64,000 nucleotides of DNA from NCBI RefSeq assembly GCF_964194025.1, contig NC_134476.1, positions 13,268,001-13,332,000 of the forward strand. The letters run 5' to 3'. The notes beneath the pieces were generated by a model. It was given only the letters and a program-made list of their open reading frames with translations. It was not told where the DNA came from and made no database searches. The stretch comes from Convolutriloba macropyga. Its lineage: Eukaryota. Below are positions 44,256 through 64,000 of the stretch, piece by piece (within the stretch, counting starts at the first letter, position 1; each line of letters starts with the position of its first letter). A program made the translations under genes and the position numbers.

Positions 44256-45998
44256 ATGTTTGCCAATTTCAACTCGTGGATAAAAACTGACATTACGTCG
44301 ACAGGAGACAAATTTTTGTCCCAACTATTCGATTCGGTAGCGAAACGAGAAAACAAGCTCGTGAAGGATTACATAATCAATTACATAACTGAGCATCCCG
44401 AATGGAAATTTGAGGACTTCGCGATTGGCCAGCGAGGTTTATTACATCATGCGAGTGGATCAGGAAATCTTGCTGTCGTGAAATACTTGACGAATGAGCT
44501 CAATTTTCCGACGGATCAGTTAGCAGAATTTGAGAGTGCTAAAGGAACTAAACTTAAGAACGTATCGGCACTATATACTGCGGCAGCAAATGGAAATTTG
44601 AGCGTTGTCGCTCACTTATTGCAGAAAAACGCTGATGTAAACCAAGTTTCGGCTAATAAAGAAACAACCTTAGTTTCTGCTTGCAGCGCGGGTAACATCG
44701 ACATGGCTCAATTTCTTATTGAATCTGGCGCGAACTTGGAAATTTCCAAAACGGGAAATGTTTCGCCTTTGATGGTTGCTTGCCAAAACGAGAACTTAGA
44801 AGTTGCGCAACTTCTGATCGAATATGGAGCCGAATTGAGTCACGATGACATAAACGGTTACTCGGCGGCGTTCTATTGCGCAACGAATCAGTCGGATTGC
44901 GTAATGGATTATCTTTTGCAGAAGGATCCGACACTTTTGGGGCAGAAAAGCAAGTTTGGCGAAAATTTAGTCGCCTATACAGCTCTAAACGGCTCATCTG
45001 CTATAGTCGATTTCATAATGGGCAAATTTGTAAACACTGAAAATGAAAACAAATTCATTTCCGACGCAGATAAAATTGAATTTCTTGAATTATTGGCATG
45101 CTCGAAATTTCTCAGAAAAACTTTTTCGAAAGAGGGAGTTAAACTGCTAAAACAAGCACACGATTTACGCGCTCAAGCCGGTTGCGCGAAAAATTCGGAA
45201 AACTTTCCGTTCGAAAATGAAACCGTTTCCGAGTTTGAGGGTTTTGAAAGTTTCGAAAAGGCGGTCGAAAACCTCGACTTCGATTTCGTTCATATTCAAA
45301 CATTCCTGATCATGAAGCGAATTCTGGGCTTAAATCATAGCATGACTTTGACCAGTGTTCGAAACTATCTGAAAAATGTAACTGAAGCTAAAAAGTTTCA
45401 GTCATTTTATGATTTTGCGATTAATAATTCGGTTGTGAACAATGAAAACTGTTCACAAATTCGTGATTTAATTGAAGATCACGCCAATTTTTGCGGAACG
45501 CAAAAAGCATTTACTGCAAATGACGTCATCTTATCTTTGCATAAATCTCGAGATTTGTTGGCTTATTTCTCGGAAAACCAGGAAAATGATTACGGTTCGT
45601 CGACAATAACCAGTGAAGAAAAACAAGCATTTTTAGCGTCAATTTGCCGGTTTATTTTGGCCTTTCTAACAAATGAAAGCACCCAAGATTCCGACAGATC
45701 TGAATTAAGTTCTACGCTGGAAGAAATTGCTAAAATTTCCGAAAGCTCGGATGAAATGAATTTTGCGTTGCTTCGCTTGATTTTGGACCCCTCGACTTAC
45801 AAAATGAAGCTCGGCAAACGAATGGCCGACTATCCGAACCAGGATGCTATCGAAATTATAGCCAACGCATCGAAAGTTGTCGAAACCGACACAAAAAGGA
45901 CAGTACTCGACGGGTTTAAGCAAAATTTTGAACGCCTATGTACTTCAAAACAACGGAATGCAATCTACGAAGTATTGGGCAACAATATCGAGGAATGA
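44256..45998 (+). CDS. Fem-1-like ankyrin repeat protein (single exon, 580 aa)
   Basis: About 6 N-terminal ankyrin repeats (LHHASGSGNLAVVKYL, ALYTAAANGNLSVVAHLL, PLMVACQNENLEVAQLL), then Fem-1-type blocks IEFLELLA, KRILGLNH and YPN. AAAATG start context. Confidence 0.8.
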   Translation: MFANFNSWIKTDITSTGDKFLSQLFDSVAKRENKLVKDYIINYITEHPEWKFEDFAIGQRGLLHHASGSGNLAVVKYLTNELNFPTDQLAEFESAKGTKLKNVSALYTAAANGNLSVVAHLLQKNADVNQVSANKETTLVSACSAGNIDMAQFLIESGANLEISKTGNVSPLMVACQNENLEVAQLLIEYGAELSHDDINGYSAAFYCATNQSDCVMDYLLQKDPTLLGQKSKFGENLVAYTALNGSSAIVDFIMGKFVNTENENKFISDADKIEFLELLACSKFLRKTFSKEGVKLLKQAHDLRAQAGCAKNSENFPFENETVSEFEGFESFEKAVENLDFDFVHIQTFLIMKRILGLNHSMTLTSVRNYLKNVTEAKKFQSFYDFAINNSVVNNENCSQIRDLIEDHANFCGTQKAFTANDVILSLHKSRDLLAYFSENQENDYGSSTITSEEKQAFLASICRFILAFLTNESTQDSDRSELSSTLEEIAKISESSDEMNFALLRLILDPSTYKMKLGKRMADYPNQDAIEIIANASKVVETDTKRTVLDGFKQNFERLCTSKQRNAIYEVLGNNIEE

Positions 45999-47658: not shown

Positions 47659-48954
47659 TCAGTTTGCTAGGGTTGAAAAACACATGAAATTTGGGTATTC
47701 GGGCATGATCAAATCAACTTTGTGTGTTCTGTAGGGTTCGAAAGCCGATTTTGCTCTTAGCCGACAATTGTTCCGACCTCGAATTGCTTCAGGAAACTTT
47801 TTCGGCTTATCAATGTCATCTGAATTTTCCTCTAATGTATTCGACCAATCGAAAGTCGCCCCAGGACTCCATTTCAAAGGCGATGTTGTTTCACGTGATT
47901 TCTGCCCCTGTTTTGGTTCTTGTTCACAAGTTTTGGGTATGAACGGTGATTCAAATTTGGGCCAATCGCTTTCCATCAACTGTTGATTTCGAGGCTTGCC
48001 AAAGAGATGTCGGTCAACATACGAGGACGCAACGCTTCGGTATAAAGACCTCTTACACCCGGATACGACTGTCGCTTTCGGTTTTCCGAGAGTTCCTGGG
48101 TTTGTTTCTCTCAACTCGTACGACTTGAGCGTTCGTGCGCTTTGGGCTTTTCTATCAGTTAAAACTTGTGAAGATAGAGGCGAGATGTCAACTCTTTTGT
48201 GAGGTGAGGGTCGGATTGTTGAACTGTGAGTTTTTGAGAGGTCAAGAGCGAAGGATTCGCTCAAAGGCCATGACCTTTGTCGTTCAGAAACCGTGCTCAA
48301 AGTTTTCCAGTTCTTCTGAAGTTCGAGAAGGAAATAATTATCGTCGTCTACAGCTAAACTAATTCCAGCATAATACGCTAAAAACTCCTCCATCGAAATT
48401 TTTCCATCTTTATTTCCGTTTTCAGATTCGAAATCTGAAACAAAATTATCAATACATTCTTCCTTTGACATTTGACCGGAAACAAACTTTTCATTTCGGG
48501 AAAAATCAAGCTTTTTCATTAGGTCTGATTTGTCAACAAAATCCGATTTGTCGTAATCGATTTTAGAGAATAATTTTTCGACCTCGTTTCGGCGTTTTTC
48601 GGGTAAAAATTGGGCTATTATTTTATCGTTGAATTCTTTGATCGAAATTGCTCCGCTCGAATCCGTATCTAGCTCTTTGAATAGCAAATTGATTTCGCGT
48701 TTTGATAGCTTGTCCAAATATAAAGATTGAATTCCAGAAACAAATTCCTTTTCGTCAATCTTGTTATCGCCGGACTTATCCAATTTTTTGAATAGAGAGG
48801 CAAGGTTTTTAAATCCATGTGCCCCGTATTTAGCCAAGCAAAGCCACTGAAATTTTTCAACTATTGACAGAGATTCGGGATTTTTGTGCAATTGTACCAT
48901 TTGGTTGCGAATTTTCTGATCCAATGTCTTCATTTTTCGAGAAGTAAGAGCCAT
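47659..48954 (-). CDS. Calcyphosin-like EF-hand protein with a RITA1-like C-terminal region (single exon, 431 aa)
   Basis: CLAKYGAHGFKNLASLFKKLDKSGDNKIDEKEF, further EF hands (DTDSSGAISIKEF, DYDKSDFVDKSDL, DGKISMEEF) and YYAGISLAVDDDNYF...W are typical of CAPS/CAPSL. The tail has YR....SYVD..LFG.P. Confidence 0.88.
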   Translation of the reverse strand: MALTSRKMKTLDQKIRNQMVQLHKNPESLSIVEKFQWLCLAKYGAHGFKNLASLFKKLDKSGDNKIDEKEFVSGIQSLYLDKLSKREINLLFKELDTDSSGAISIKEFNDKIIAQFLPEKRRNEVEKLFSKIDYDKSDFVDKSDLMKKLDFSRNEKFVSGQMSKEECIDNFVSDFESENGNKDGKISMEEFLAYYAGISLAVDDDNYFLLELQKNWKTLSTVSERQRSWPLSESFALDLSKTHSSTIRPSPHKRVDISPLSSQVLTDRKAQSARTLKSYELRETNPGTLGKPKATVVSGCKRSLYRSVASSYVDRHLFGKPRNQQLMESDWPKFESPFIPKTCEQEPKQGQKSRETTSPLKWSPGATFDWSNTLEENSDDIDKPKKFPEAIRGRNNCRLRAKSAFEPYRTHKVDLIMPEYPNFMCFSTLAN

Positions 48955-52762: not shown

Positions 52763-54334
52763 AAATATTTTAACACCGCAATTTCTCGCCCACTTGGAAA
52801 CACCGCTTTGAACAAAAACCATTCTCTTTTCAACGCACTCAATAATTTTGTTCAGCTCCAAAGTCACTCTTAAATATTTTCATGCTTGTGATTTCTTGCT
52901 CCAAATTTCAATCCAATGTTAGTGATTAAAAATAAAAAACGACTTCTTCAATACCGTTCTTCAAGTCTCAAAAACACCAACACGCACACAAAGATAAACG
53001 AACACATATAGTTACACACATATACAGACAGAAGGAAACTATCACCGCAAAAATTATCACCATTGGTTTGACTGAAAGCATGAAGAGGTACAATTTTTTA
53101 AGATATATTGACTAGTTCTATTACAAAACAGAAGTGTAGTGAACGATTTTGTTCTTCGTAGCTTCGAAAACTCTCGTCCTTCTTTATTTTTTTGAGATGA
53201 ACTAATAAATAGAGTCAAAATGTGCAATGTGTTAGCTAATTATGGCAGAATTAAAGAGTTTCAATTCATTTGTGTTAGTTTTCAAGCTCCTTTTATGTTG
53301 CTATTCTCGCCAGTTTACATGTCAGAATTGCATAGTTGATTAGTCGTAGATGACGACGTCGGCAAAATGTAAACCGTTTTCCATAACGTCACTTTTGCAG
53401 TCTAGATCTGATGTCTTAGGAAGATTATTGACCAATTAGAAGTTTTGTTGAATTTTCTGTATCAACAACATGTCGATTCGCAAACCAATCGTAATAAACT
53501 TGATGCATTTTTATAATCGTTTTTTGAAGTGGTTGATATGTCGAAATGCTGTTTTGCTGATAATGAGGTTAATTCGAGTTTGAGTTTCACTTCATGCTTG
53601 ACAATCACCTACTAATAATAGTTACTAACTATGTTTGTTGACAAAGTGAAATTTTCTGGTCATCAATGTTTTATCGGAGCTTCATGTAAAGTATATTGAT
53701 CGAAAGCTAAAATGTTTATCAAAAAGAATTAGGCGCGGTTTTTTGCCATTTCGTCATATGTTTAAAGAAAATCAGTTTTTAAGATCGCAGCAGTAGCATT
53801 AAATATTGCTAGTCGTGCTATTCTACCTTCACTGCTTAATTTGGCCTTGTGCTTAGTTAGGAATCTGGGCCATAACAAAAAGTAAATGTACATTTCTGGA
53901 TTAAACAACACAAAGTTGGTTTCCTGATCTACACAACGCTACAAATTTACACCACCAACTGAATAAATACAATCAGTCATCTAAACTACACAGGGTTTGA
54001 GAGTTAAAAGAAAATGCAAAAATTATATCTACTGGTAAGACAAACTGAACCATATTTTTCAAAAAAATATTTCATATATTGAAACCAAAAATATTTGTGC
54101 GAAATCTCCGCTAAAGGGTGCAGAATATGAACAGCAGCCTGAAGTATACATAATTAACAAATTGCATCGAAGAGAATTTGGTGACATTGTTGCCGTTTCA
54201 AATTAGAGACGTTAAAAGTTAATACACAGAAAACACTAACAAAAACTGATAAAACACATATTATAGAATTCCTATACCTATAAATCAAACGTATCATAGA
54301 ATCATAAAACAACGAGCAGAACTTTTTCGAAATG

Positions 54335-55069
54335 CTAGCCAAACATTTCAACCTGAATTCTTCCACTCTTTTTCATTTTTCTGATCCGGTCCCGTGCCTG
54401 TTCAAACGTCAAGTTTATTCCCTGTCCAGACGATAGAATGGTAGCCAGAGCTTTCTCAATCGCCATACACGCAGCTGCTGAACCACATAAATAGACAAAC
54501 GCTTTCTTGTCGACCAACATCAAATATATTTTGTTTTGGTGGACCATCATCTCGTCCTGGACATATCGTTTTTCTTCGGGATTCACGCGGGAGAATGCAG
54601 GCACAAGGTCCGTAATCAATTGATTTCCTGCCAGTTTTGTCAATTCGTCTTGATATAAGAAGTCGTTTGGAGTCCTACAACCAAAGAACAACATTCGATC
54701 TACCTTTCCAGGTTCTTTGTTGTTGCTTAGAGCAACTATTTCTTCCCAAAACGACCGGAAAGGGGCAAGTCCGGAACCAACTGCAAACAACAAAAGTGGG
54801 GTGTTGAGGGTTAGACTGCAGCAGTCAACGTCTGGTAATCTAGCCGGGGCAACCTGGCCTGGAAGTCGGAAATGTGGGTTTGGGTTCACGAACAGTCGTA
54901 TCTCGGAAGAGGTTTTGACACCCTGTAGGAAGTTTGAGCAGAGACCCTTACGTTTGGTCTTGTCGGGGGTGAGGTACTCGGCCACACTTACAGTGATCTG
55001 GATTTTATTATGGTCTGTTCTGGGTGAAGATGAGATGGAATAGGGTCTGGGTTGCAAAACAGGGAGAAC
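54335..55069 (-). CDS. NOS: Nitric oxide synthase, exon 4 (FAD/NADPH FNR-like domain)
   Basis: Motifs LPVLQPRPYSISSSP, GLCSNFL, GSGLAPFRSFW, LFFGCR, AFSR, KRYVQD, VYLCGS; ends EMFG-stop. Acceptor ccttttAAG| at 55070. Confidence 0.95.
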   Translation of the reverse strand, partial: VLPVLQPRPYSISSSPRTDHNKIQITVSVAEYLTPDKTKRKGLCSNFLQGVKTSSEIRLFVNPNPHFRLPGQVAPARLPDVDCCSLTLNTPLLLFAVGSGLAPFRSFWEEIVALSNNKEPGKVDRMLFFGCRTPNDFLYQDELTKLAGNQLITDLVPAFSRVNPEEKRYVQDEMMVHQNKIYLMLVDKKAFVYLCGSAAACMAIEKALATILSSGQGINLTFEQARDRIRKMKKSGRIQVEMFG

Positions 55070-57520
55070 CTTAAAAGGAAACCCAGGTTGAGAGGGCAAC
55101 TGTTTGGAAGGCATATGAAATTGTCTAACTGAAATACCCGGACGACACTAATAAAAAAAGAAAAAAAGATCGGCCCATAGTATTTTCCCAAACCCATACC
55201 CAAACCGTCCGACTAAATCCTTTTCTTTTGTCGGCACCCCAAATAGCAAAATTTCGACATCAGTTTCTCCGCCCATAACTTCTAGCAATAGACAGGTATA
55301 TATTTGCATCAAATTCGGCAGTACAAATTCATCAACTATTTTTAAGACCACTGAAGTTTGGTGTAAAAATCAACTCTAAATACTTTAGTTGAGAGATTTT
55401 GTTGAGCTACCTCAAAAGTGGAACTTTATATGCAGAGATCAATATTCATAAAAGAAGCAATTGATTAGTCAAGTTTTTAATTTGATGTTCAACGGACAAA
55501 AATCAACGGTGAAAAAGCGCAAAACCAAAATTAAAATCTTGTTGAAGTTTTTACATTTGTATTTGGTATATCAATTCTAAAATCAGAAAAGCTTACGCAA
55601 TTTTTCAAAATTTATTGAAAGAACCATTTTCTGTCAGATATTGTTTTTTGCGACTTGTTGTGAACGTGCTTGGCAAGAGATTTTCGCTATTTACCCCAGA
55701 CCTTGAGTCTTGAAACCCCTATGACTACTGTTTTTGATATACAATTAGAGTCATTTTATGACCGTTTTCGATTTTTGAACAAAATAACAATAAAAATGTG
55801 AAATTGGACTCTGCAATTAGTATGTAATTGTAAAGTTATCCTTTTTATCAGGAAAATAAACCGGTGCTCTTTAGGCTAAGCTGCAAATGAGACGGTAGTT
55901 ATACACAATAAAGCACAAATATCAACTGCTGCGGCAATTGAAGAACGAAAATCTATTCCGACGACTCTTAAGTCAAAGTAAAGCACAAATGTTATGCTCA
56001 TGCTGCGACAGATCTGGAAAGATCTACGTTTTGACTTGATAAGTTATGGTACACTTCAAAAATAGAGAAAAGTTTTAATTGAAGTCCTATATGTTGGTAC
56101 TGATATAGAATTGCTGATCACTCTTTGTGGAGCTATTCAAAACAAATGCAATCTGTTGTCTATATCATAAAAGTATCGGAGATAGCAAATTAATTGATTG
56201 TAAGTTTAGATTACGTGACTCTGCTTGAAGTCACTGCGAACGTCAGACAACTATCAAGAACTGCGAAGCGGTTTAGGATGCGGTCAGAATTTCGAAGTGA
56301 CGTAGTGCCGAGTCAGGTCCCTAGTGAAGACCTAGTCTTATGATAAAACCCAATTAGTCTAGTATGGGTTCCATATAGACCAAAATTACACAGTCGAGGT
56401 TTTTAGTTAAAGTCCAGCAAAAGTCTTCCTGGGTCCAAATCTTTTCATATGAACTTATTGTCGAGCATGGTCTTTTCATGAGTCGAGCAAAGTTCTTTTC
56501 CTGAGTCTGCTTTATTACCAATTTGGACAACATGTATATATATTTTTAAATTGGATACTGAAATACTGAAGCAGCAATGGAGCATTGCACCATTGCAGTC
56601 CATATTGACACAGTTGAACACTGTTTGAAAACTGCCAAAGGTCTTGAGAAAATTTGTTCAGATAAAGCAGTTATCGCTGCTGGACTATATTGACTCAATA
56701 CCTCATTGAATGAAACTGAGTAGTTTAATGGTAATGACCTTCTTTCCACATTTTCTCTAGACATGACGAAAGTGGGTCGTTATTTTGTTGTTTTCCCTTC
56801 CAAGATATGGATTATCAGTTTTTTAAAAATGCATTTATTTTGACAGATTGACGGTTCTTCAGAACAGCAAAAGGTGAAGGAGCATACATGCCGACTGCAT
56901 TATAAGAAAAATTGTGCAGTAAAAATGCACCTAATATTTTTGAGGCAAACTGCAGACTCATGAAAAGAGTTTTTCTTGACCCATGATTTGACAATATTTT
57001 TGACCTGGTCAAAAAAGACCCATGAAAAGACTTTTTCTTGACTTATGATTAACTTCTGCTCGTCACAATTTTTACTCCTCAAAATTTCTGGTCGGAGAAA
57101 AGTCCAGAGACCAAGTTTGGCTGAGCAGAACTCCAGTTGAACTTTTTGGGTCAAGCAAACGCCTAGCGCTACAAAATTTGTCGACAAAAATGTCGAGGCG
57201 ATTAATAAAGTATAGCAAAGTTCTTTTCATAGATCTTTTGGGTCTAGCATGGTTTGCCAATTTTTGGCCGAGCATTGTCTTTTCATAGGTCACGGTCTAG
57301 ACTAGCGGTATTTTTGCTTAAAACACGCACGTTGGAAGCTTTAAGATGCTTCAAGTTAAACGCGAAGTTATCTTCTGACTACCTATATAGGAAATATAGC
57401 ACGCTTCTAATTCTACATCTAGCTTTAAATTGTTCTTAATATGGTGTTATAAATATTGTCGAATTTATTATCTACTTATTGCAAAAAAACAAACTGTGAT
57501 ATTATCAAACAGCAGTGTGC

Positions 57521-57672
57521 CTGAATAAGTTTGTCAAAAACAATTTGGATCGAAGGAAACTCATTGAGCGTCTCTAGCAGGGTCGGGAAGTTCTGAGCCC
57601 AATTCGAGTATGCCTCGGAGCTATTAACAAGTTCCTCGAGTCTCCTCTGTTCCTCACTGACAGATGCAAACC
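57521..57672 (-). CDS. NOS: Nitric oxide synthase, exon 3 (connecting domain; absent from the ORF track)
   Basis: Manual translation GFASVSEEQRRLEELVNSSEAYSNWAQNFPTLLETLNEFPSIQIVFDKLIQ matches the NOS E..RL..L...Y..W....PT..E.L.EFPS block. TAG acceptor is in phase with exon 2. The 3' end needs a GC donor. Confidence 0.88.
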
Positions 57673-58111
57673 CTATATGAAATTATCAATGAAGTCGATT
57701 CATTTATAGGGTAACTTTTTCCACCCCCCCCCCCCCCCCCAAGCTATTTGCTTGCAAAAATAATTCACAATAACCATCAAAAACAAACGATTCCTTGTAA
57801 ATCACGAAATATCACTACACGTTAAGGACAAACAGTCGGAACAGTCTCATATTAGCTTTAAAAGAAATTGGGCGCCTTAACTTGAAAAATGCTTAATTCT
57901 TAATTCTTGAATTTGTCGAGCAATTTTTGAGCCCAATAATTATTTGGGGTTCTTCTTGCGAAATTTTAGTTTCGTTACATTTGAAAGCTTTTACAAAGTA
58001 GATCAAACATGATCATCAAGGAACTTTCGTTTCAAACTGTCGCATGTTAACTAATTTCGTTAACGATTATTTCGAGTTAGAACTTTGTACTAGTGTCATA
58101 TCGAAAGTTAC

Positions 58112-59347
58112 CTGATAAAAAGTCCAACGCCGGCGGTCTCAAAGGCGACACTAAATCAAAGTATTGGGTTCCAAGGTCACGCAAAGTCCAGAAATTATTG
58201 TCAGATAACACAGACAGCGAGCATGCTTTGTCCAGATTTGGGTCCTCCGGTTTCATACCACATCTTTGAAGTAACTCCTCGAAATATTCTTTTGGGTTTT
58301 CTGGGAAAACATACACGTGATCGCCTGGTAAATAATGAACTTTCGAGTCTATTTCGAACTCAATTTGTCGAACGGAATGATCATTTTGGCTTCCAATGTC
58401 TCGTTTGATCAACTCCCTGTTCATAGTAACCGTTGCTACGTAGGGGTTGTCTTTGGTATAGGGTGCCATGTTTGGTTTGATCTCTGGAACTTTGTCGTAA
58501 AACTCGAGTTCAATTATCTTCAGTTTGCCGTCCAGATTTTCATCGTCATCTTGATCATCGATATCTGATGTGTCATTTGTAGGTTTGTCATTGTCAGTGT
58601 CCACAGGGAATAGTTTGTTCAAGGCTGAGATTGTTTCCGATTCCCATTTGCAATAAGATTTGTATTGGTTATCCAGGCCGTCGCATAATCCCAACGAAGC
58701 GATTCTGTGCGATCCAAGCTTATCCAAAGCCGAATCCAAGTTTATTCCGAACAAGCAGTAGTCCTCGTATGCCTTGGAACCAATTGCACAAACTGCATAT
58801 AAATAATGCTTCAATGAACCCCGTTGTTTGGATCCCGGTTCCGATTCCACTGCGCTCATTTTTTCCGCCATCCAATCTTCGGTTTCAAGCCCGTTACTCG
58901 GCGCATTACCACGACCAAAAGTCGAAGTTATAATGAATAGAATTGAGCTTTCTTGCTCAAACTGTTTGAAAATAAACTTGTCAAGTTCCACAAGCTTCGC
59001 TCTGTATCCTTCCTTGTAAAGACGTTTTGACATCTGCTTAGCATACGAAAATGCAGTTCCCGTAGTCGACGCATACAAAATTATGATCAAAGTCCGTTTG
59101 TTTAGTGTTTTGATAGCTAGCCCAAGTGGTGTCAACAAATTTTCCATCAGTTTCCATTGTTTGTTAGCCGCGAAGAGTGACTTTCTGCCTTGTTTTCTCT
59201 TGACTTTTTCAAAGTATGCCGTCCAGGGTTCATGCTGGTCAAGAACGCATGGTTTTACCAGGTAATTCATCATTTCCTGGTGGAAAGTCAAACTCATTCC
59301 CCCACTAATTGGGGGCACAATCCATACCCAATCACAAGGTGTGTTCC
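58112..59347 (-). CDS. NOS: Nitric oxide synthase, exon 2 (oxygenase end, putative CaM helix, FMN domain, start of FAD/connecting domain)
   Basis: Splicing restores RGNTPCDWVWIVPPISG...FHQEM. FMN motifs LYASTTGTA, TSTFGRGNAP, YAVCAIGSKAY; also YLPGDHVYVFPEN. Acceptor ttcaAG| at 59348, donor CAG|GTAACT at 58111. Confidence 0.95.
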
Positions 59348-60267
59348 CTTGAAGTGAAATAAATCAAAACTTGCGAAAAAACTTCAGAAACATTATTTTG
59401 TACATACAAAAATCTTTAATTTTCATTGTCTCAGAAACTCGGAAACAAAAAATTGATACATTGATGAATCATGTCAGTTATCTGGAGTATTTTAATCAAT
59501 TCTGTTTCTATTTTTCACAAACAAGTTAAGATTAGGGTAATAAGCGTGGGTGAAAATCAGTTAGATTGAACAAATTTCGTTTTTTTCTTTTATTCAATAT
59601 TGGATATACCCAAAACTAGGCTCAAATTTGAATTGTTGTAGCCATCGTTAATTTGAAAACCATAAGTGAATTAAATCAAAACGTAAGTGACTTGAGTGAT
59701 TTAATTTCTACGCGCTATGTTTTCCCACCATTACACTATCTAATAACTAAGATTGTATCAATTGGACCAAAATTAAAGAAAGTCTAAGTAGTGATTAATT
59801 TTAGAAATCCGCCTCAAAACTAAAGGTGGATTAAGAAGACAATTATCAGTTTCGCAATTATCCATAGCACTGTTCACAAAACGGTTCATTCTTTGAACTG
59901 GGTGTGATTTGATTAAAAATAAACTTCGCGCAATAAGGTATAAGACTAATTACATGCTCAAATTGGAATTGATTTACCTTCATTGTGAGTATTCAAAACA
60001 AAATGTGGTCTTTTTCATACAATAAATACCATAAATCCACTTTTTCAGAACCTGATTTACAACGTGAGAAATGGCTACGCGAAAAGAAAACCTGTTACGA
60101 AGCACTATCATTGGTTTCTACAGAACGCTAATTTTTGGTTTGTTCAGGGTCGATTTCAGTCTGGATGGACTGTTACCGTAACCCTGTACGCAATGCCGGT
60201 CAGTCTGATCAAAATCTGGCTAGGGCCACACAACGCACACGGGGTACTTTGTTTATGCTTTAAACTA

Positions 60268-60841
60268 CCCTAGTCGAGACCTGGAATTTATGAAAAGACA
60301 TATTAACTCCAGGGGGGGGGGGTAAATATTGAATTGAATTACGCGGTCGAGGACCCAGTTAAATTCGAGGCTAATTCTTTCCATAAGTCCAGCCAAATTC
60401 TTTTCATATGCAAAAATGAGGCAGATTAAAAAGTTCCGACAACACCTGGGTTCGATCTCGTGACCTTCTCCAATCTTACCCAATGCTTAACCAATTGAGC
60501 TACATGTTTATAACTTTGAAAGAAATTGAAAACAGGTCATTATAACGGTCGTGATCGTAATTCCAGGACATCACATTAGGTCCAGACAAATTCCAGAACA
60601 CCTTTATTGTCCAGCCAAATTCCAGAACACATTTATTTTCCAGCGAAATTCCAGGACGTATGTTTTAGTTCCAGCCAAACTCTAGGACGGTTGTTTTAGT
60701 TCCAGCCAAAGTCCAGGACATCACATTGGGTCCAGACAAATTCTTTTCATACCCAATATCTGTCGAGGACAGTCTTTTCAGCTTTTCATACCTTAAATCT
60801 GTCGAGGACGGTCTTTTAATAATTCCAGGTCTCGACTATGG
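60268..60841. mobile_element. MITE in NOS intron 1
   Basis: TIR CCCTAGTCGAGACCTGGAATT / AATTCCAGGTCTCGACTATGG, TA flanks, internal ~30-bp TCCAG tandem repeats. A related fragment lies at 42661-42775. Confidence 0.8.
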
Positions 60842-60956
60842 TATTTTTGCCTAAACTACCAAAAACAATACCTGCAATTGAAAGCTATGATCATAAGAAA
60901 ACTTGACTCGCAGGAATAAAAATTTCGCAAGTTTTGAATTCTCCGAGGTGTGTTAC

Positions 60957-62148
60957 CTCTATCTGCGATGTCCTGTTTCAAGAACTTCATGAATCCCTCT
61001 GCTGCATTGTGGTGATCTGTGATCGTAATCTGTGCTTTCTGAAATGAGTGCAAAACTGCAGCATTCACTTCAACATACAATCGGTCAATGTTCAGCTGAC
61101 TGCTAGCGGCTAAAGTAACGTCCATTCCGATTTCCTCCGCCAATTGAGGAATAAAATTGTATCTCTGTAAATCGCAAAGATTCCTTCCAATTTCTGTTTG
61201 CATAAACCAACCACTGAAAGGTACTGACTTGAAAACCATACCTCCGATCTCAATTGCCTTGTCAGCGACAAAAGGTTGCGCAACCCACCGCAACCCAAGT
61301 TTCTTAATTGCAACGTCATATTTGGGTTCCGGGTGTGACAGGTACACGATTGGTTTGCAGTCATCAGGGAGTTCGTACCAACTTGGAGGCTCTTCGACGT
61401 TTGATTGGACGATTATAGGCAACAGATCCCATTGTGTTCGCTGATTGGTCGGTTTGTTCCAACCAAGTTTCACAGCAATTCTGGTCAGTTCCTGATTGGA
61501 TGGGTCTCCCAGCAGAGTTCCGTCTTCTTGCTCATAACAAGCGAATCGCAAGTACTGCGAAGACCACATTCGCGAATTGAGCGGCAAAACCAAAACGGAA
61601 GCGCCCAATTTTCCACCATTGTAAGCGTGCCTTATATGGTCACAAATTGCATGGAACATTTCGTCGTTAGTTTTGACATCTCGTCTGTCTATAATGTCCA
61701 TAGTTTGCCAGTAGAGTCGGTTAATACAGCGAGCTGCGTTTCGCCAAGCGAGCTGGCAACCATATCTTAATTCGTCAGTTGAGTAACTGACATTTCCAGT
61801 CAATCGGATTTCATCTTCGATTTCTTTCAGCCGTTCTTCGTAATCATCCTTCGAAGTTTGCTTGTCTTGATGGTAGATCTTCAAGAAATCACGCGATTCT
61901 TTCACGACTTGATCGGTAGTGAAGTCCGGCAAAGGCCAGTTTTTGGAGCTATCAGTTTTGATGTACGGGGAGTAATACATATAAGTGTTAGTGCACACTT
62001 GATGTCGGCAGTCCTGATACAGATTAGATTTAGGGCCGTTTATAGGAAAACAATCATTTGTTGCGTAGTTCCTCAACCGTGCCACTGGGCATTTATCAAA
62101 GACCAGGGGTTCCTGGCCTCTCTCGAAACTTTGCTCCTCGTCCGCCAT
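60957..62148 (-). CDS. NOS: Nitric oxide synthase, exon 1 (nearly the whole oxygenase domain). Model: join(62148-60957, 59347-58112, 57672-57521, 55069-54335), 3315 nt, 1104 aa
   Basis: Zn motif CRHQVC (CX4C), heme-thiolate AWRNAARCINR, GDP, PFSGWFMQTEIG with the substrate Glu, and TDHH. Donor AG|GTAACA at 60956, phase 1. Confidence 0.95.
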
Positions 62149-64000
62149 TTTTGATAACCCTAAACTGATTTGTATGAAAATTCGAATAGCTCAAGTTTGG
62201 AAGTGAACAACTTTAACGGCTGCAGTTACCAAACTGCGTTTTGAGGTTTTATTGGTATATGTGAACAATAATTAATATTAGTACAACTATATTGATATGT
62301 AGCAAATTAATGTTTTTTGGTAAAAGTAATAATTTAAGTAAGGTTCATAGAATCGGAGAAAAACTATCAATATTGGGAGCGAATTTGCTCATTTTGTCTT
62401 AAGCAAAAAGAAAACACAATTTTACAGGAATTTTTTTGGAAATTTGTTTTAAGATCTTGAGAGATTCCAAATCCTATTAAAAAACTACATCAAGTAATAA
62501 ATTGTTGACTGGATAGATAAAATTTTGTAAGATAATTGCAAAGTATGTCCAGTAATTCTGGACTCAACTATTTTGCTTGATCTATGGAGCGTGAAAGTAC
62601 AATGGAGTGACAACATCTGTTATGTTCCTTAATCAACAGGACACCCATCTGTGAATGAATCCCATTATTTCCACAATTTCATAATTGTTTATTTAAAACA
62701 CTAGATAAGAGCTTTGATCTTTGGTACTATTCAACTAATCTTAAGTAGAATGGTTTCCATTTTTTCAATATTTTCATATTAGAATTCCTTTTTCCGAAAC
62801 AAAATTTTTACTCGCCGCGATCACTGATTTTTATTTTACATAATTAGACCTCTCTAAATCTCTAAACTTGTCGAACAAGCGAAAATTGAAGGTGTTCTAA
62901 TTGATGATTAATCCAGAAAGTCCTTGCTGTTTAATCCAGAAATCTGTTTTTCAGCGCGTGCTTAACCATATCTTCAGGTTGACCATAGCCTGAATAATAT
63001 TGGCTGCATTGGTGGTTTCACGTAAAAGATTAACAACGCGAAAAAATGGCAATAGTCGCCAAAAAAAGAACATTCATGCTCCCAAAATGAACAGCCTGAA
63101 ATGTGGGTAATAATAGAAAAGGGCAGCAGAGAACATGCTACTGTTGATGCTTAATGCTTATTGTAAAACTGACTCTTAACTAATTAATTGTCCAATTCTA
63201 GAATCAAGATTTGGGCCTTTAAACGAATCTGTCGGCATAATTTGCGCGAAATTAACTACCTAAAATGTTGAAATTGGTTACAAAATTCAAAAAATGTGAG
63301 CTAAAAATCATGATCGGTTCTGTTTCACCGTTGTCCGCACGAATGAACTGGTATTTGATTCCAAGCAGATGCTATCCACAGTCATTAAATTTTACCGGGG
63401 TGATTTTTAACGGAGCCTTTTCTACCTCAATTATGGTTCTTTCTCGACTTAGACAGGTCTAGTAGTGATAACTAACCGAAAAAATTCAACTTAGAGATGT
63501 ATTTACAAAAAGAGGCTATATATTAGAGGAGTCAGTGCACCTAACAAAGCAAACATGAAAACAAAAAAAGATGCCATACCACTTTATGACCCAAGTCCGT
63601 CTTTTCAATAAGTGTGCAGACTGGGTAGAATAATGATCAACGGTCAAAGGTTACGCAATTTTGCTCTTGGTGACCGAGAAAAATTAAAAATGAATCCACT
63701 AATTTACTATGAGAATACTACATCAAGTAGATGTCAGCATCGGGTACTGATGTGCAGCTAGAGTGGGCCACATTAAAAACAATTCATTCAGTAGAAACAA
63801 GGTTCAAGGTTCTTAATTCAAGGTACTGAAACCCATTTATTACTTCAAAAGCAAAAAAAAGTTTATTTTTGAACTTTTCATGGTAGTCAAATATATCGAA
63901 TCAAACAAGCCTTTCAAAAAATTCAGTCCTTTGTCAGGTCATTTTTTCGGAGTTTTAAAGACTTATGCCCAGTACCAGAATTAAAAAAAAAATATCATGT

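What the first reader, a model, noticed from the sequence alone, without database searches (positions are those of the whole stretch)
54335..62148. Minimal, intron-poor nitric oxide synthase lacking the usual regulatory elements
Seen: a complete oxygenase-CaM-FMN-FAD/NADPH NOS of 1104 aa in only 4 exons, with nearly the whole oxygenase domain in one 1.19-kb exon. It has no PDZ domain or N-terminal extension. The FMN spacer between GNAPSNG and YAVCAIGS is only ~27 aa. The protein stops at ...IQVEMFG, and there is a ~15-aa CC-containing insert before the NADPH GSGLAPF motif. Established: typical animal NOS genes have over 20 largely conserved introns, nNOS/eNOS have a ~40-50 aa FMN autoinhibitory loop, and mammalian NOSs end in EDIFG plus a 21-42 aa regulatory tail. 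Inference: this is a de-repressed, possibly high-output NOS whose gene went through an intronless stage (retroposition, or horizontal transfer from an alga, protist or bacterium) and then gained new introns.
Basis: partly seen in the sequence, partly recalled or inferred. Interest (0 to 1): 0.75.

Follow-up and report, generated by a model that had tools for sequence, protein, structure and literature searches.

The report
Odd NOS gene shared with rotifers
This worm's gene for the enzyme that makes the signalling gas nitric oxide is real and stripped-down, and it belongs to an unusual branch of that enzyme family otherwise seen only in another acoel worm and in bdelloid rotifers.

Summary
On the minus strand lies an intact four-exon, 1104-codon NOS gene. 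It has no PDZ domain, no tail after ...EMFG, a 15-residue insert before GSGLAPF and a 30-residue FMN spacer. Its four exons tile rotifer and acoel relatives residue for residue. Intron 3 needs a GC donor, and no RNA data could be found.

None of this is peculiar to this gene. Its two paralogues, Symsagittifera roscoffensis and bdelloid rotifers share the tail-less end and the insert. They are 57-70% identical in the oxygenase domain, against 44% or less for every other NOS. A rotifer-like contig holds the whole coding sequence in two exons. Its single 48-nt phase-0 intron sits exactly at the site of our intron 3. Introns 1 and 2 are absent from all relatives examined, so they are lineage-specific gains. 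Intron 1 has a 13-bp direct repeat that supplies both splice sites.

In ML trees of both domains this lineage falls outside the canonical animal NOS clade. AU tests do not reject a sister position (p 0.17 and 0.28) and only borderline reject nesting among bilaterians (p 0.05). Horizontal transfer, ancient paralogy or a retrogene origin stay open, and "high-output" is untested. Another first-reader note of the scan (s1-232333) had flagged the intron-1 repeat.

The parts
60957..62148 (-). Exon 1. It runs from ATG at 62148 to the donor AGAG|GTAAC: 397 full codons plus the first base of a split Gly codon. It holds the N-terminus, the Zn-site-like DCRHQVC and nearly all of the oxygenase domain.
59348..60956 (-). 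Intron 1 (1609 nt, phase 1, GT-AG). It is specific to this gene.
   Evidence: It is absent in paralogues C2 and C7, in S. roscoffensis P0197 and P0198 and in rotifer-like L012.
60946..60958 (-). Upstream copy of the 13-bp direct repeat (AG|GTAACACACCT). It supplies the donor.
   Evidence: 12 of 13 bases match the downstream copy
59337..59349 (-). Downstream copy of the 13-bp direct repeat (AG|GGAACACACCT). It supplies the acceptor AG and the start of exon 2.
60923..60940 (.). One arm of the 18-nt inverted repeat near the ends of intron 1. The partner arm is at 59361-59378 and the arms are 94% complementary.
   Evidence: The intron ends cofold at -23.1 kcal/mol, against -12.0 +/- 2.5 for 200 shuffles.
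59361..59378 (.). The other arm of the intron-1 inverted repeat.
60262..60847 (.). A high-copy MITE-like element with 34-nt terminal inverted repeats, nested inside intron 1.
   Evidence: pair I1, 85% complementary. Contig word depth is about 100-600 times that of the flanks.
58112..59347 (-). Exon 2 (411 full codons). It holds the end of the oxygenase domain (CDWVWIVPP, FHQEM), a basic linker where calmodulin binds in other NOS, the FMN domain and the first part of the FAD domain.
57673..58111 (-). Intron 2 (439 nt, phase 1, GT-AG: CAG|GTAACT...ATATAG|GG). It is specific to this gene.
57521..57672 (-). Exon 3 (50 full codons, FASV...IVFDKLIQ), part of the FAD-binding domain.
55070..57520 (-). 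Intron 3 (2451 nt, phase 0). In the homology model it begins GC and ends AAG. Its position is shared with both paralogues, with acoel relatives and with rotifer-like contigs.
   Evidence: Splicing itself was not observed.
54335..55069 (-). Exon 4 (244 codons plus TAG). It begins VLPVLQPRPYSISSS and holds the 15-residue insert, GSGLAPF and the NADPH-binding domain. It ends ...IQVEMFG.

Best explanation
This is an intact gene for a full-length nitric oxide synthase. It has a haem oxygenase domain, a basic linker, and FMN, FAD and NADPH reductase modules. The genome is an acoel worm's: earlier scan notes name Convolutriloba macropyga, and the closest named relative found here is Symsagittifera roscoffensis.

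The gene belongs to a divergent NOS lineage whose named members so far are one acoel species (S. roscoffensis) and bdelloid rotifers. The stripped-down traits are ancestral to that lineage. These traits are: no PDZ domain, no residue after the [DE]MFG end, a 15-20-residue insert before the NADPH loop, and a coding sequence in two exons split by one phase-0 intron. In this gene two further introns were inserted later. Intron 1 came from an insertion whose 13-bp target duplication now provides both splice sites.

Shown here: the gene model, the lineage, its shared traits and the intron history. Inferred: that it makes NO from arginine with electrons passed from NADPH through FAD and FMN to haem. 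This rests on the retained haem cysteine, substrate glutamate and pterin tryptophans, and on conservation between two phyla. Its regulation differs from mammalian enzymes but cannot be read from sequence. How the lineage arose is unresolved: ancient duplicate or retrogene, or horizontal transfer.
For: Gene model.

Lineage:
- A HMMER search of 1.84 billion representatives with exon 1 gives two hits at 62-63% identity. The next hit is at 44% or less.
- Searches with Rotaria P0153 and with acoel P0394 each list 18 proteins at 44-100% identity before a steep drop in score (below: one ENA fragment each, and other NOS at 28-37%). The named ones are all bdelloid rotifers: Rotaria, Adineta, Didymodactylos.
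- P0197's cluster holds a RefSeq S. roscoffensis NOS-like protein.
- The clade has 100/100 support on a stem of 1.1 substitutions per site in the careful oxygenase tree (49 rows). It is starred at 100 in the reductase tree (40 rows).
- Canonical Metazoa is monophyletic without it: 100/99 and 99.

Shared traits: the tail is 0 residues and the FxLP-to-GxGxAPF distance is 27-32 in clade members, against 12 elsewhere. A 3-residue insert lies before LGLRW, and the clade shares RCINRL, GWFM and RGNTP.

Intron history.

Intron 1 footprint.

No other NOS type in this genome.
Against: - No transcript evidence was found, and intron 3 needs a GC donor.
- Two tyrosines that contact the substrate in other NOS are replaced (WVAQP, GWFM). 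The role of these tyrosines is recalled, not tested here.
- The calmodulin-site region contains a proline, and its function is unverified.
- Many clade members are unnamed ENA or Logan proteins, so the taxonomic spread may be wider than 'acoels plus bdelloids'.
- The deep position of the clade is unstable. It sits next to green-algal NOS in FastTree (support 77). Under LG+C20 it sits among Physarum, diatom and algal groups.
- AU tests do not reject a sister position to canonical Metazoa (p 0.166; p 0.279).
Confidence: 0.78

Rival explanations
1. Ordinary orthologue. The gene is simply the acoel copy of the canonical bilaterian NOS. It lost nearly all introns as acoel genes generally did, and it evolved fast. 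The resemblance to rotifer NOS reflects two fast-evolving lineages.
For: - Acoel genes are intron-poor: 3.2 introns per gene in S. roscoffensis (PMC9911081, passage).
- Single-ORF neighbours lie in the window, and the diflavin-reductase loci have open frames of 598-601 aa.
- AU tests do not reject clade X plus Metazoa.
- Nesting among bilaterians is only borderline rejected (p 0.0515).
Against: - The acoel and rotifer proteins are 57-63% identical in the oxygenase domain, against 44% or less for any other NOS.
- They share indels, the tail-less end and the same single intron. Within-clade branches are short (0.1-0.25) behind one long common stem. That is shared history, not long-branch attraction.
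- Canonical Metazoa excludes the clade with 100/99 support.
- Constraining it among bilaterians costs 25.6 lnL units.
Confidence: 0.1
2. Horizontal transfer. The lineage entered animals from an unsampled protist or alga, or passed between a rotifer and an acoel ancestor, as an intron-poor gene. It then replaced the canonical NOS.
For: - The clade lies outside canonical Metazoa in trees of both domains.
- Canonical Metazoa and Physarum share a shorter GWKxxG-xxFD segment. The clade instead has the longer form seen in the fungal, diatom, one of two green-algal (Chlorokybus), cyanobacterial and Bacteroidota rows; the Ostreococcus row is one residue shorter.
- RCINR is shared with Physarum and Ostreococcus.
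- The named hosts are patchy, and the genome holds no canonical NOS.
- From recall, not tested here: bdelloids are known for gene uptake, and these acoels house green algae.
Against: - No donor clade is identified, and the nearest outside group changes with the model.
- The AU tests are not significant.
- Rotifer-type rows and acoel rows can be reciprocally monophyletic (p 0.494), so no direction is indicated.
- The acoel-rotifer path length (0.70-0.79) is similar to fly-mammal in the same tree (about 0.75). That fits vertical descent since early bilaterians.
Confidence: 0.3
3. Ancient duplicate or retrogene. An early animal made a second, intron-poor NOS copy that diverged quickly. Most phyla kept the canonical gene, while acoels and rotifers kept the copy.
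For: - A sister position to canonical Metazoa is not rejected.
- There is a near-absence of introns in both phyla, with one shared intron.
- The long stem fits relaxed or changed constraint after duplication.
Against: - It needs many independent losses.
- A pure retrogene would have no intron, so intron 3 must be an early gain or a retained one.
- The indel shared by Metazoa and Physarum but not by this clade argues against an origin inside Metazoa.
Confidence: 0.35
4. Not a working NO synthase. The changed substrate pocket and missing regulatory parts mean it is a pseudo-enzyme or uses another substrate.
For: Two substrate-contact tyrosines are replaced. Paralogue C7 has lost the whole NADPH-binding part. 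No RNA evidence was found.
Against: - The same replacements are conserved across acoels and rotifers, together with the haem Cys, the TEIG Glu, the DWxW pair and FHQEM.
- All four exons are open and colinear with relatives.
- The genome keeps GTP cyclohydrolase I and HNOB-domain genes.
Confidence: 0.08

Closest known systems
Bdelloid rotifer NOS (unnamed or 'Nitric oxide synthase' products of Rotaria sp. Silwood1, R. socialis, Adineta steineri, Didymodactylos carnosus)
   Same: It is 57-61% identical to our exon 1 and 44-46% identical to exons 3 and 4. It has the same motifs and the same insert before GxGxAPF. It also ends at [DK][DV]M[FY]G with no tail, and the related rotifer-like contigs L012/L013 carry the same phase-0 intron.
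   Different: Rotifers have a longer FMN spacer (39-49 against 33). They have one 48-nt intron instead of three long ones. They belong to a different phylum.
Mammalian inducible NOS (NOS2)
   Same: It has no PDZ domain and no 40-50-residue FMN autoinhibitory insert. The domain order is the same.
   Different:
- The FxLP-to-GxGxAPF spacing is 12.
- The human gene has 27 exons (PMC2677215, passages).
- Oxygenase identity to our exon 1 is about 36-44% for the non-clade hits, which include vertebrate NOS; identity to the solved iNOS chains was not computed.
Physarum polycephalum NOS A/B
   Same: It is a non-canonical eukaryotic NOS without PDZ. It has RCINR and the one-residue-shorter TE[IL]x-RN segment. 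It lies in the same unresolved part of the LG+C20 tree.
   Different: It has 27 exons, none at animal positions (PMC2677215). It has 9 residues after DVFG. It groups with canonical Metazoa in the reductase tree (support 92).
Ostreococcus tauri NOS and other green-algal NOS
   Same: It is a full-length NOS without PDZ. It is the nearest outside group in FastTree (support 77).
   Different: That grouping disappears under the site-heterogeneous model. The FxLP-to-GxGxAPF spacing is 12, and residues follow the LDIFG motif.
Transposon-born introns whose target-site duplication supplies the splice sites ('introners'). Earlier scan notes s1-263043 and s1-210994 report such introns in this genome.
   Same: Intron 1 has a 13-bp direct repeat that places AG|GT at one end and AG| at the other. 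It also has inverted repeats near both ends.
   Different: Its termini have no other copy in the genome. The inverted repeats lie 14-17 nt inside the ends. No transposase or repeat family was identified.

Membership tests
Full-length eukaryotic nitric oxide synthase | Oxygenase domain matching Pfam PF02898 above its cut-off | tested here: met
   337 bits against a cut-off of 22.7. The PDB search gave 81 NOS chains; the best is eNOS at E 2e-77.
Full-length eukaryotic nitric oxide synthase | Haem-thiolate cysteine in WRNAxRC, substrate glutamate in TEIG, and the pterin tryptophan pair DWxW followed by FHQEM (residue roles recalled) | tested here: met
   WRNAARCINRLYW, GWFMQTEIG, CDWVWIVPP and TFHQEM are present.
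Full-length eukaryotic nitric oxide synthase | N-terminal zinc site Cys-x4-Cys (recalled) | tested here: met
   DCRHQVC lies in exon 1. The same motif is in the paralogues, the acoel relatives and the rotifers.
Full-length eukaryotic nitric oxide synthase | Two tyrosines that hold the substrate carboxylate (WYALP and GWYM in canonical enzymes; role recalled) | tested here: not met
   The gene has WVAQP and GWFM. The same holds in the rotifers and in most acoel relatives.
Full-length eukaryotic nitric oxide synthase | Calmodulin-binding amphipathic helix between the oxygenase and FMN domains | tested here: inconclusive
   A basic linker (...RKSLFAANKQWKLMENLLTPLGLAIKTLNKR...) sits at the right place.
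Full-length eukaryotic nitric oxide synthase | FMN, FAD and NADPH modules in that order | tested here: met
   Flavodoxin_1, FAD_binding_1 and NAD_binding_1 are found.
Full-length eukaryotic nitric oxide synthase | NO and citrulline formed from L-arginine | not testable with these tools
   This needs recombinant protein.
Canonical metazoan NOS clade (cnidarian, placozoan and bilaterian NOS) | Falls inside that clade in a tree | tested here: inconclusive
   It lies outside in ML trees, and canonical Metazoa has 100/99 and 99 support without it. AU tests do not reject a sister position (p 0.166, 0.279). Nesting with bilaterians gives p 0.0515.
Canonical metazoan NOS clade (cnidarian, placozoan and bilaterian NOS) | Residues after the EDIFG end motif, and 12-residue spacing from FxLP to GxGxAPF | tested here: not met
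   The tail is 0 residues here, against at least 5 (up to 141) in each of the 16 canonical animal proteins; my pattern caught the end motif in 15 of 16 (mis-set at a later motif in Sciurus NOS1), and P0005's RDIFG end was read from the printed C-terminus. The spacing is 27 here, against 12.
Processed retrogene | No introns, poly(A) remnant and flanking duplications | tested here: not met
   One intron (intron 3) is ancestral to the whole lineage. Poly(A) or flank marks of so old an event cannot be expected.
Horizontally acquired gene | Nested with support inside a donor clade | tested here: not met
   The outside neighbour changes with the method, and support is weak: 77; 83/85; 91/61.
Transposon-born intron (intron 1 only) | Target-site duplication that supplies the splice sites, terminal inverted repeats, and other copies of the element in the genome | tested here: inconclusive
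   The duplication (12 of 13 bases) and the 18-nt inverted repeat are met. Other copies are not met: the termini are unique in the genome.

The most novel reading that the evidence does not exclude
Acoel worms and bdelloid rotifers do not use the canonical animal NOS at all. They use a separate, nearly intronless NOS lineage that reached them by horizontal transfer, either from an unsampled protist or alga or between the two animal groups. It replaced the ancestral gene. On this reading NO signalling was re-founded in these animals with a tail-less, differently regulated enzyme.
Probability: 0.3. Interest if true: 0.85.

Novelty: new variant of a known kind. Interest (0 to 1): 0.66.

Why it matters
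NOS evolution in animals is usually told as one gene family that diversified by duplication. A 2026 preprint (10.64898/2026.09.15.751659, passages read) treats acoel NOS as an ordinary bilaterian homologue and mentions no rotifers.

Here the acoel enzymes form a tight clade with bdelloid rotifer enzymes, on a long stem outside the canonical animal clade. They share their own indels, have no C-terminal tail and keep a two-exon gene. This matters in three ways:
- If it holds, it is either a hidden ancient NOS paralogue or a case of gene transfer into animals.
- It gives a natural experiment on NOS regulation: no tail, a short FMN loop, a new insert, and Tyr-to-Phe and Tyr-to-Val changes in the substrate pocket.
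- The gene gives two dated intron gains on a nearly intron-free background. One of them carries a clear insertion footprint.

Tried and rejected
RNA evidence:
- The look-up of sequencing runs (kind rna) found only four runs of one study. They hold 85-93% of the sampled words, introns included, so they are DNA.
- The single read-laying run (55000-60990, all four runs) showed no intron-spanning joint. It served only to reveal repeats in introns 1 and 3.

Taxon check:
- A search with the neighbouring fem-1-like ORF gave only unnamed close relatives (47-49% identity).
- The acoel identity rests on earlier notes and on the S. roscoffensis member of P0197's cluster.

Other searches:
- The first metagenome scan with P0153 found nothing. 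The second, with alignment A1, gave three loci.
- The ESM Atlas search gave no usable hit.

Canonical intron positions:
- No annotated animal genome is reachable here.
- PMC22704 is not held.
- PMC2677215 gives only exon numbers.
- So whether intron 3 sits at a canonical animal position stays untested.

Rejected gene models:
- The alternative exon-4 acceptors (55147, 55128, 55099) and the ATT|GT donor would break the residue-for-residue tiling on relatives.
- An upstream coding exon is unlikely. There is an in-frame stop at 62191-62193, and the relatives' N-termini are of similar length.

Introns and topology:
- Hairpin ends for introns 2 and 3 are not above shuffles: -12.7 against -10.0 +/- 2.3, and -16.3 against -13.2 +/- 2.8.
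- Acoels nested inside rotifers are not supported (p 0.494 for the alternative).
- The 83-row careful tree did not finish in two runs. A 49-row subset was used instead. The 34 rows dropped were mostly redundant clade-X, canonical-animal, algal, other-protist, fungal and bacterial rows, among them the long branches P0149, P0061, P0105 and P0123.
- The exon-B rows of the paralogues were misplaced in FastTree, with only 35% of columns filled. They were left out afterwards.

Literature:
- Searches turned up no paper on acoel or rotifer NOS structure apart from the 2026 preprint.
- One search found nothing on the C. macropyga genome.
- Supplements were not opened.

Full report
**1. What is there**

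Six-frame translation of 54200-62400 on the minus strand shows four long open segments that read as a NOS. Splice-site inspection gives this model:
- Exon 1 is 62148-60957, with donor AGAG|GTAAC.
- Exon 2 is 59347-58112, with acceptor TTCAAG| and donor TCAG|GTAAC.
- Exon 3 is 57672-57521, with acceptor ATATAG|.
- Exon 4 is 55069-54338, followed by TAG.

Pfam finds NO_synthase (E 1.3e-100) in exon 1 and its last 40 profile positions in exon 2. It then finds Flavodoxin_1, FAD_binding_1 (exons 2, 3 and 4) and NAD_binding_1, and no PDZ domain. Solved mammalian oxygenase domains match at E 1e-73 to 1e-77.

I searched the model exon by exon and never joined the exons. The four pieces tile Rotaria P0153 as 25-387 / 389-861 / 863-912 / 913-1184. 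They tile Adineta P0183 as 41-417 / 419-861 / 863-912 / 913-1178. One residue is left over for each phase-1 split codon.

The only weak point is intron 3. The tiling requires CAG|GCACAC as donor and TTTCCTTTTAAG| as acceptor. Earlier scan notes (s1-208302 and others) describe GC, GA and GG introns in this genome. I did not test those notes.

No RNA run holds the locus. The laid runs were DNA contigs without spliced joints.

**2.

All are present. The spacing and tail figures are in the table in section 4.
- The N-terminus has 46 residues before DCRHQVC and an in-frame stop upstream of the ATG. The paralogues, S. roscoffensis and a rotifer-like contig start at similar distances.
- The protein ends ...IQVEMFG.
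- The FMN spacer is 30 residues by direct count (33 by my pattern). It is short but not iNOS-short.

**3. The genome has three NOS genes, all intron-poor**

A Pfam search of the whole 1.18-Gb assembly finds oxygenase matches at three loci only: this one, C2:18.51 Mb and C7:43.55 Mb. A search with a canonical crinoid NOS adds no further oxygenase locus.

Both paralogues have three coding exons:
- Met...YDK|
- AFKDLGLRW... running through the calmodulin-site region, FMN and FAD to ...LEELLQ|
- ILPPIQPRPY...EMFG

Their second intron sits exactly where our intron 3 does. Their first intron has no counterpart in our gene. They are uninterrupted at our intron 1 and intron 2 sites.

So there is no intron-rich second NOS. 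The window's neighbours are single ORFs of 580 and 431 aa. Two diflavin-reductase loci show 598-601-aa open frames. S. roscoffensis averages 3.2 introns per gene (PMC9911081, one passage with the assembly table).

**4. A lineage shared with rotifers**

HMMER against 1.84 billion representatives with exon 1 gave P0001 (63%) and P0002 (62%). Nothing else exceeded 44%.
- P0002 is from Rotaria sp. Silwood1.
- A search with its full-length cluster mate P0153 lists 18 proteins at 46-100% identity before a steep drop in score (bits 852 to 571); below it come one ENA fragment (P0200, 48% over 45% of the query) and other NOS at 28-36%. The named ones are Rotaria, Adineta steineri (contigs up to 1.4 Mb) and Didymodactylos.
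- A search from the acoel side (P0394) returns the same set plus one more protein.
- P0197, our gene's nearest relative at 70% identity, shares a 90% cluster with a RefSeq S. roscoffensis 'NOS-like protein'. This also supports the acoel identity given in earlier notes.

| Trait | This gene | Rotifer clade members | Other NOS measured |
|---|---|---|---|
| Residues after the [DE]MFG / EDIFG end | 0 | 0 | at least 5 (up to 141) in each of 16 canonical animal proteins (two read from the printed ends) |
| FxLP to GxGxAPF | 27 | 28-32 | 12 in all 11 where both motifs were found |
| FMN spacer | 33 | 39-49 | 13-28 (four shortest canonical), 58-87 (nNOS/eNOS type) |

The paralogues and the orphan exon copy also end at ...EMFG, and the rotifer-like contig L012 ends ...QDMFG. 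Clade members further share DCRHxVC, RCINRL, LRWxAQPFVADKAIEIGG, GWFM and RGNTP.

**5. Gene structure of the lineage**

Two rotifer-like metagenome contigs (L012 and L013, GC 32-33%) carry the whole coding sequence. One 48-nt GT-AG intron in phase 0 lies between ...GELIQ and ILPKLVPRYY.

The genomic ORF calls P0197 and P0198 (acoel) and P0001, P0195 and P0200 (rotifer-type clade, unnamed ENA) run uninterrupted to ...ELIQ. They then read through into V....

The ancestral gene of the lineage therefore had two coding exons. Introns 1 and 2 of our gene, and the first intron of the paralogues, are later gains.

Intron 1 shows how one gain happened:
- AG|GTAACACACCT at its start repeats AG|GGAACACACCT at its end (12 of 13 bases).
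- Removing the intron leaves one copy, and that copy is the coding sequence seen uninterrupted in C2 and C7.
- An 18-nt inverted repeat lies 14-17 nt inside both ends.
- The ends cofold at -23.1 kcal/mol, against -12.0 +/- 2.5 for shuffles.
- The termini are unique in the genome.
- A high-copy MITE is nested inside the intron.

This agrees with note s1-232333.

**6. Where the lineage sits**

- FastTree (186 rows) puts the clade next to a green-algal group that includes Ostreococcus and Chlorokybus, with support 77.
- Under LG+C20+F+G4 the careful 49-row oxygenase tree gives the clade 100/100 on a stem of 1.11. It places the clade in a weakly resolved set with Physarum, diatom, green-algal and unnamed groups. 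Canonical Metazoa (13 rows) is 100/99.
- The reductase tree (40 rows, quick) gives the same picture. There Physarum groups with canonical Metazoa at 92.

| AU test | Delta lnL | p |
|---|---|---|
| Clade + canonical Metazoa, oxygenase | 10.0 | 0.166 |
| Clade + canonical Metazoa, reductase | 6.6 | 0.279 |
| Clade + named bilaterians, excluding cnidarian and placozoan rows | 25.6 | 0.0515 |
| Rotifer-type rows as one clade | 0.13 | 0.494 |

The alignment shows a 3-residue shorter GWKxxG-xxFD segment in canonical Metazoa, Physarum and one bacterial row. The clade lacks this shortening.

The conclusion has two parts. The common stem of acoel and rotifer NOS is real, so these genes are not simple orthologues of the canonical bilaterian gene unless a transfer occurred. 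The data cannot choose between an ancient duplicate or retrogene and horizontal transfer.

**7. Function**

The haem cysteine, the TEIG glutamate, the tryptophan pair and the flavin and NADPH motifs are kept across two phyla. The genome has GTP cyclohydrolase I and HNOB-domain genes. I therefore take it to be a working NOS.

Two tyrosines of the substrate pocket are replaced throughout the lineage. Note s1-232332 saw this for our gene.

Regulation cannot be read off the sequence. The tail is missing and the FMN loop is short, which in mammalian enzymes relieves repression (recalled). The lineage-specific insert and the odd linker could add controls of their own.

**8. Literature**

Three searches found no description of acoel or rotifer NOS structure. 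The one exception is a 2026 preprint that lists NOS in Acoela as an ordinary homologue. I read passages only, and it has no mention of rotifers. Supplements were not opened and might hold alignments that bear on this.

Noticed in passing
G000:C9:14346073-14346810 (minus strand; L019:5073-5810), 1.02 Mb from the gene: A stand-alone, open copy of the NOS last exon. It has 244 aligned codons, is 73% identical and starts ILPVLQPRPY after a good acceptor. It ends ...IQLEMFG then TAA. A Nei-Gojobori estimate gives dN/dS of about 0.18. No other NOS exon lies within the 10-kb locus. Upstream are a CA/TG microsatellite and retroelement pol fragments.
   Followed up: partly
G000:C7:43548198-43548533 (last exon of paralogue C7; L008): The C7 paralogue's last exon lacks the whole NADPH-binding part (about 150 residues, in frame) but still ends ...RIRQEMFG. 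The RefSeq S. roscoffensis model P0394 also diverges after ...NFLHQTV.
   Followed up: partly
window 60262-60847: A MITE-like element with 34-nt terminal inverted repeats and internal 29-31-nt tandem units. Its contig word depth is hundreds of times that of single-copy flanks.
   Followed up: partly
window 56200-57400: Repeated sequence inside intron 3. Depth is up to about 100 times that of the flanks, and contigs break or join at 56479-56500.
   Followed up: no
G000:C1:28693918-28694298, C8:40307735-40308499, C15:22115262-22115579; C8:16508850-16514247: HNOB (haem NO-binding) domain matches lie on three chromosomes, and there is a GTP cyclohydrolase I locus. A 2026 preprint reports soluble guanylate cyclase subunits as absent in Acoela, so these loci deserve a look.
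   Followed up: no
window 44256-45998 (+) and 47659-48954 (-): Two intronless genes lie next to the NOS. One is a 580-aa ankyrin-repeat (fem-1-like) ORF whose nearest relatives are unnamed at 47-49% identity. The other is the 431-aa calcyphosin-like ORF of note s1-232298.
   Followed up: partly
P0003 (934 aa, contig 145 kb, ENA/Logan, unnamed): A canonical-type NOS, sister to a scorpion NOS in the trees, appears as one long open frame ending ...SPNLLG. It may be another intron-poor animal NOS.
   Followed up: no
proteins P0014, P0018, P0020 and about 25 others: Many bacterial NOS, for example from a Hapalosiphonaceae cyanobacterium, carry the oxygenase at the C-terminus behind the reductase. 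Bacteroidota proteins of 1502 aa carry it in the middle.
   Followed up: no
window 62160-62148: An acceptor-like TTTAG|G lies 12 nt upstream of the ATG. It could be a spliced-leader acceptor, since acoels trans-splice many genes (PMC9911081).
   Followed up: no
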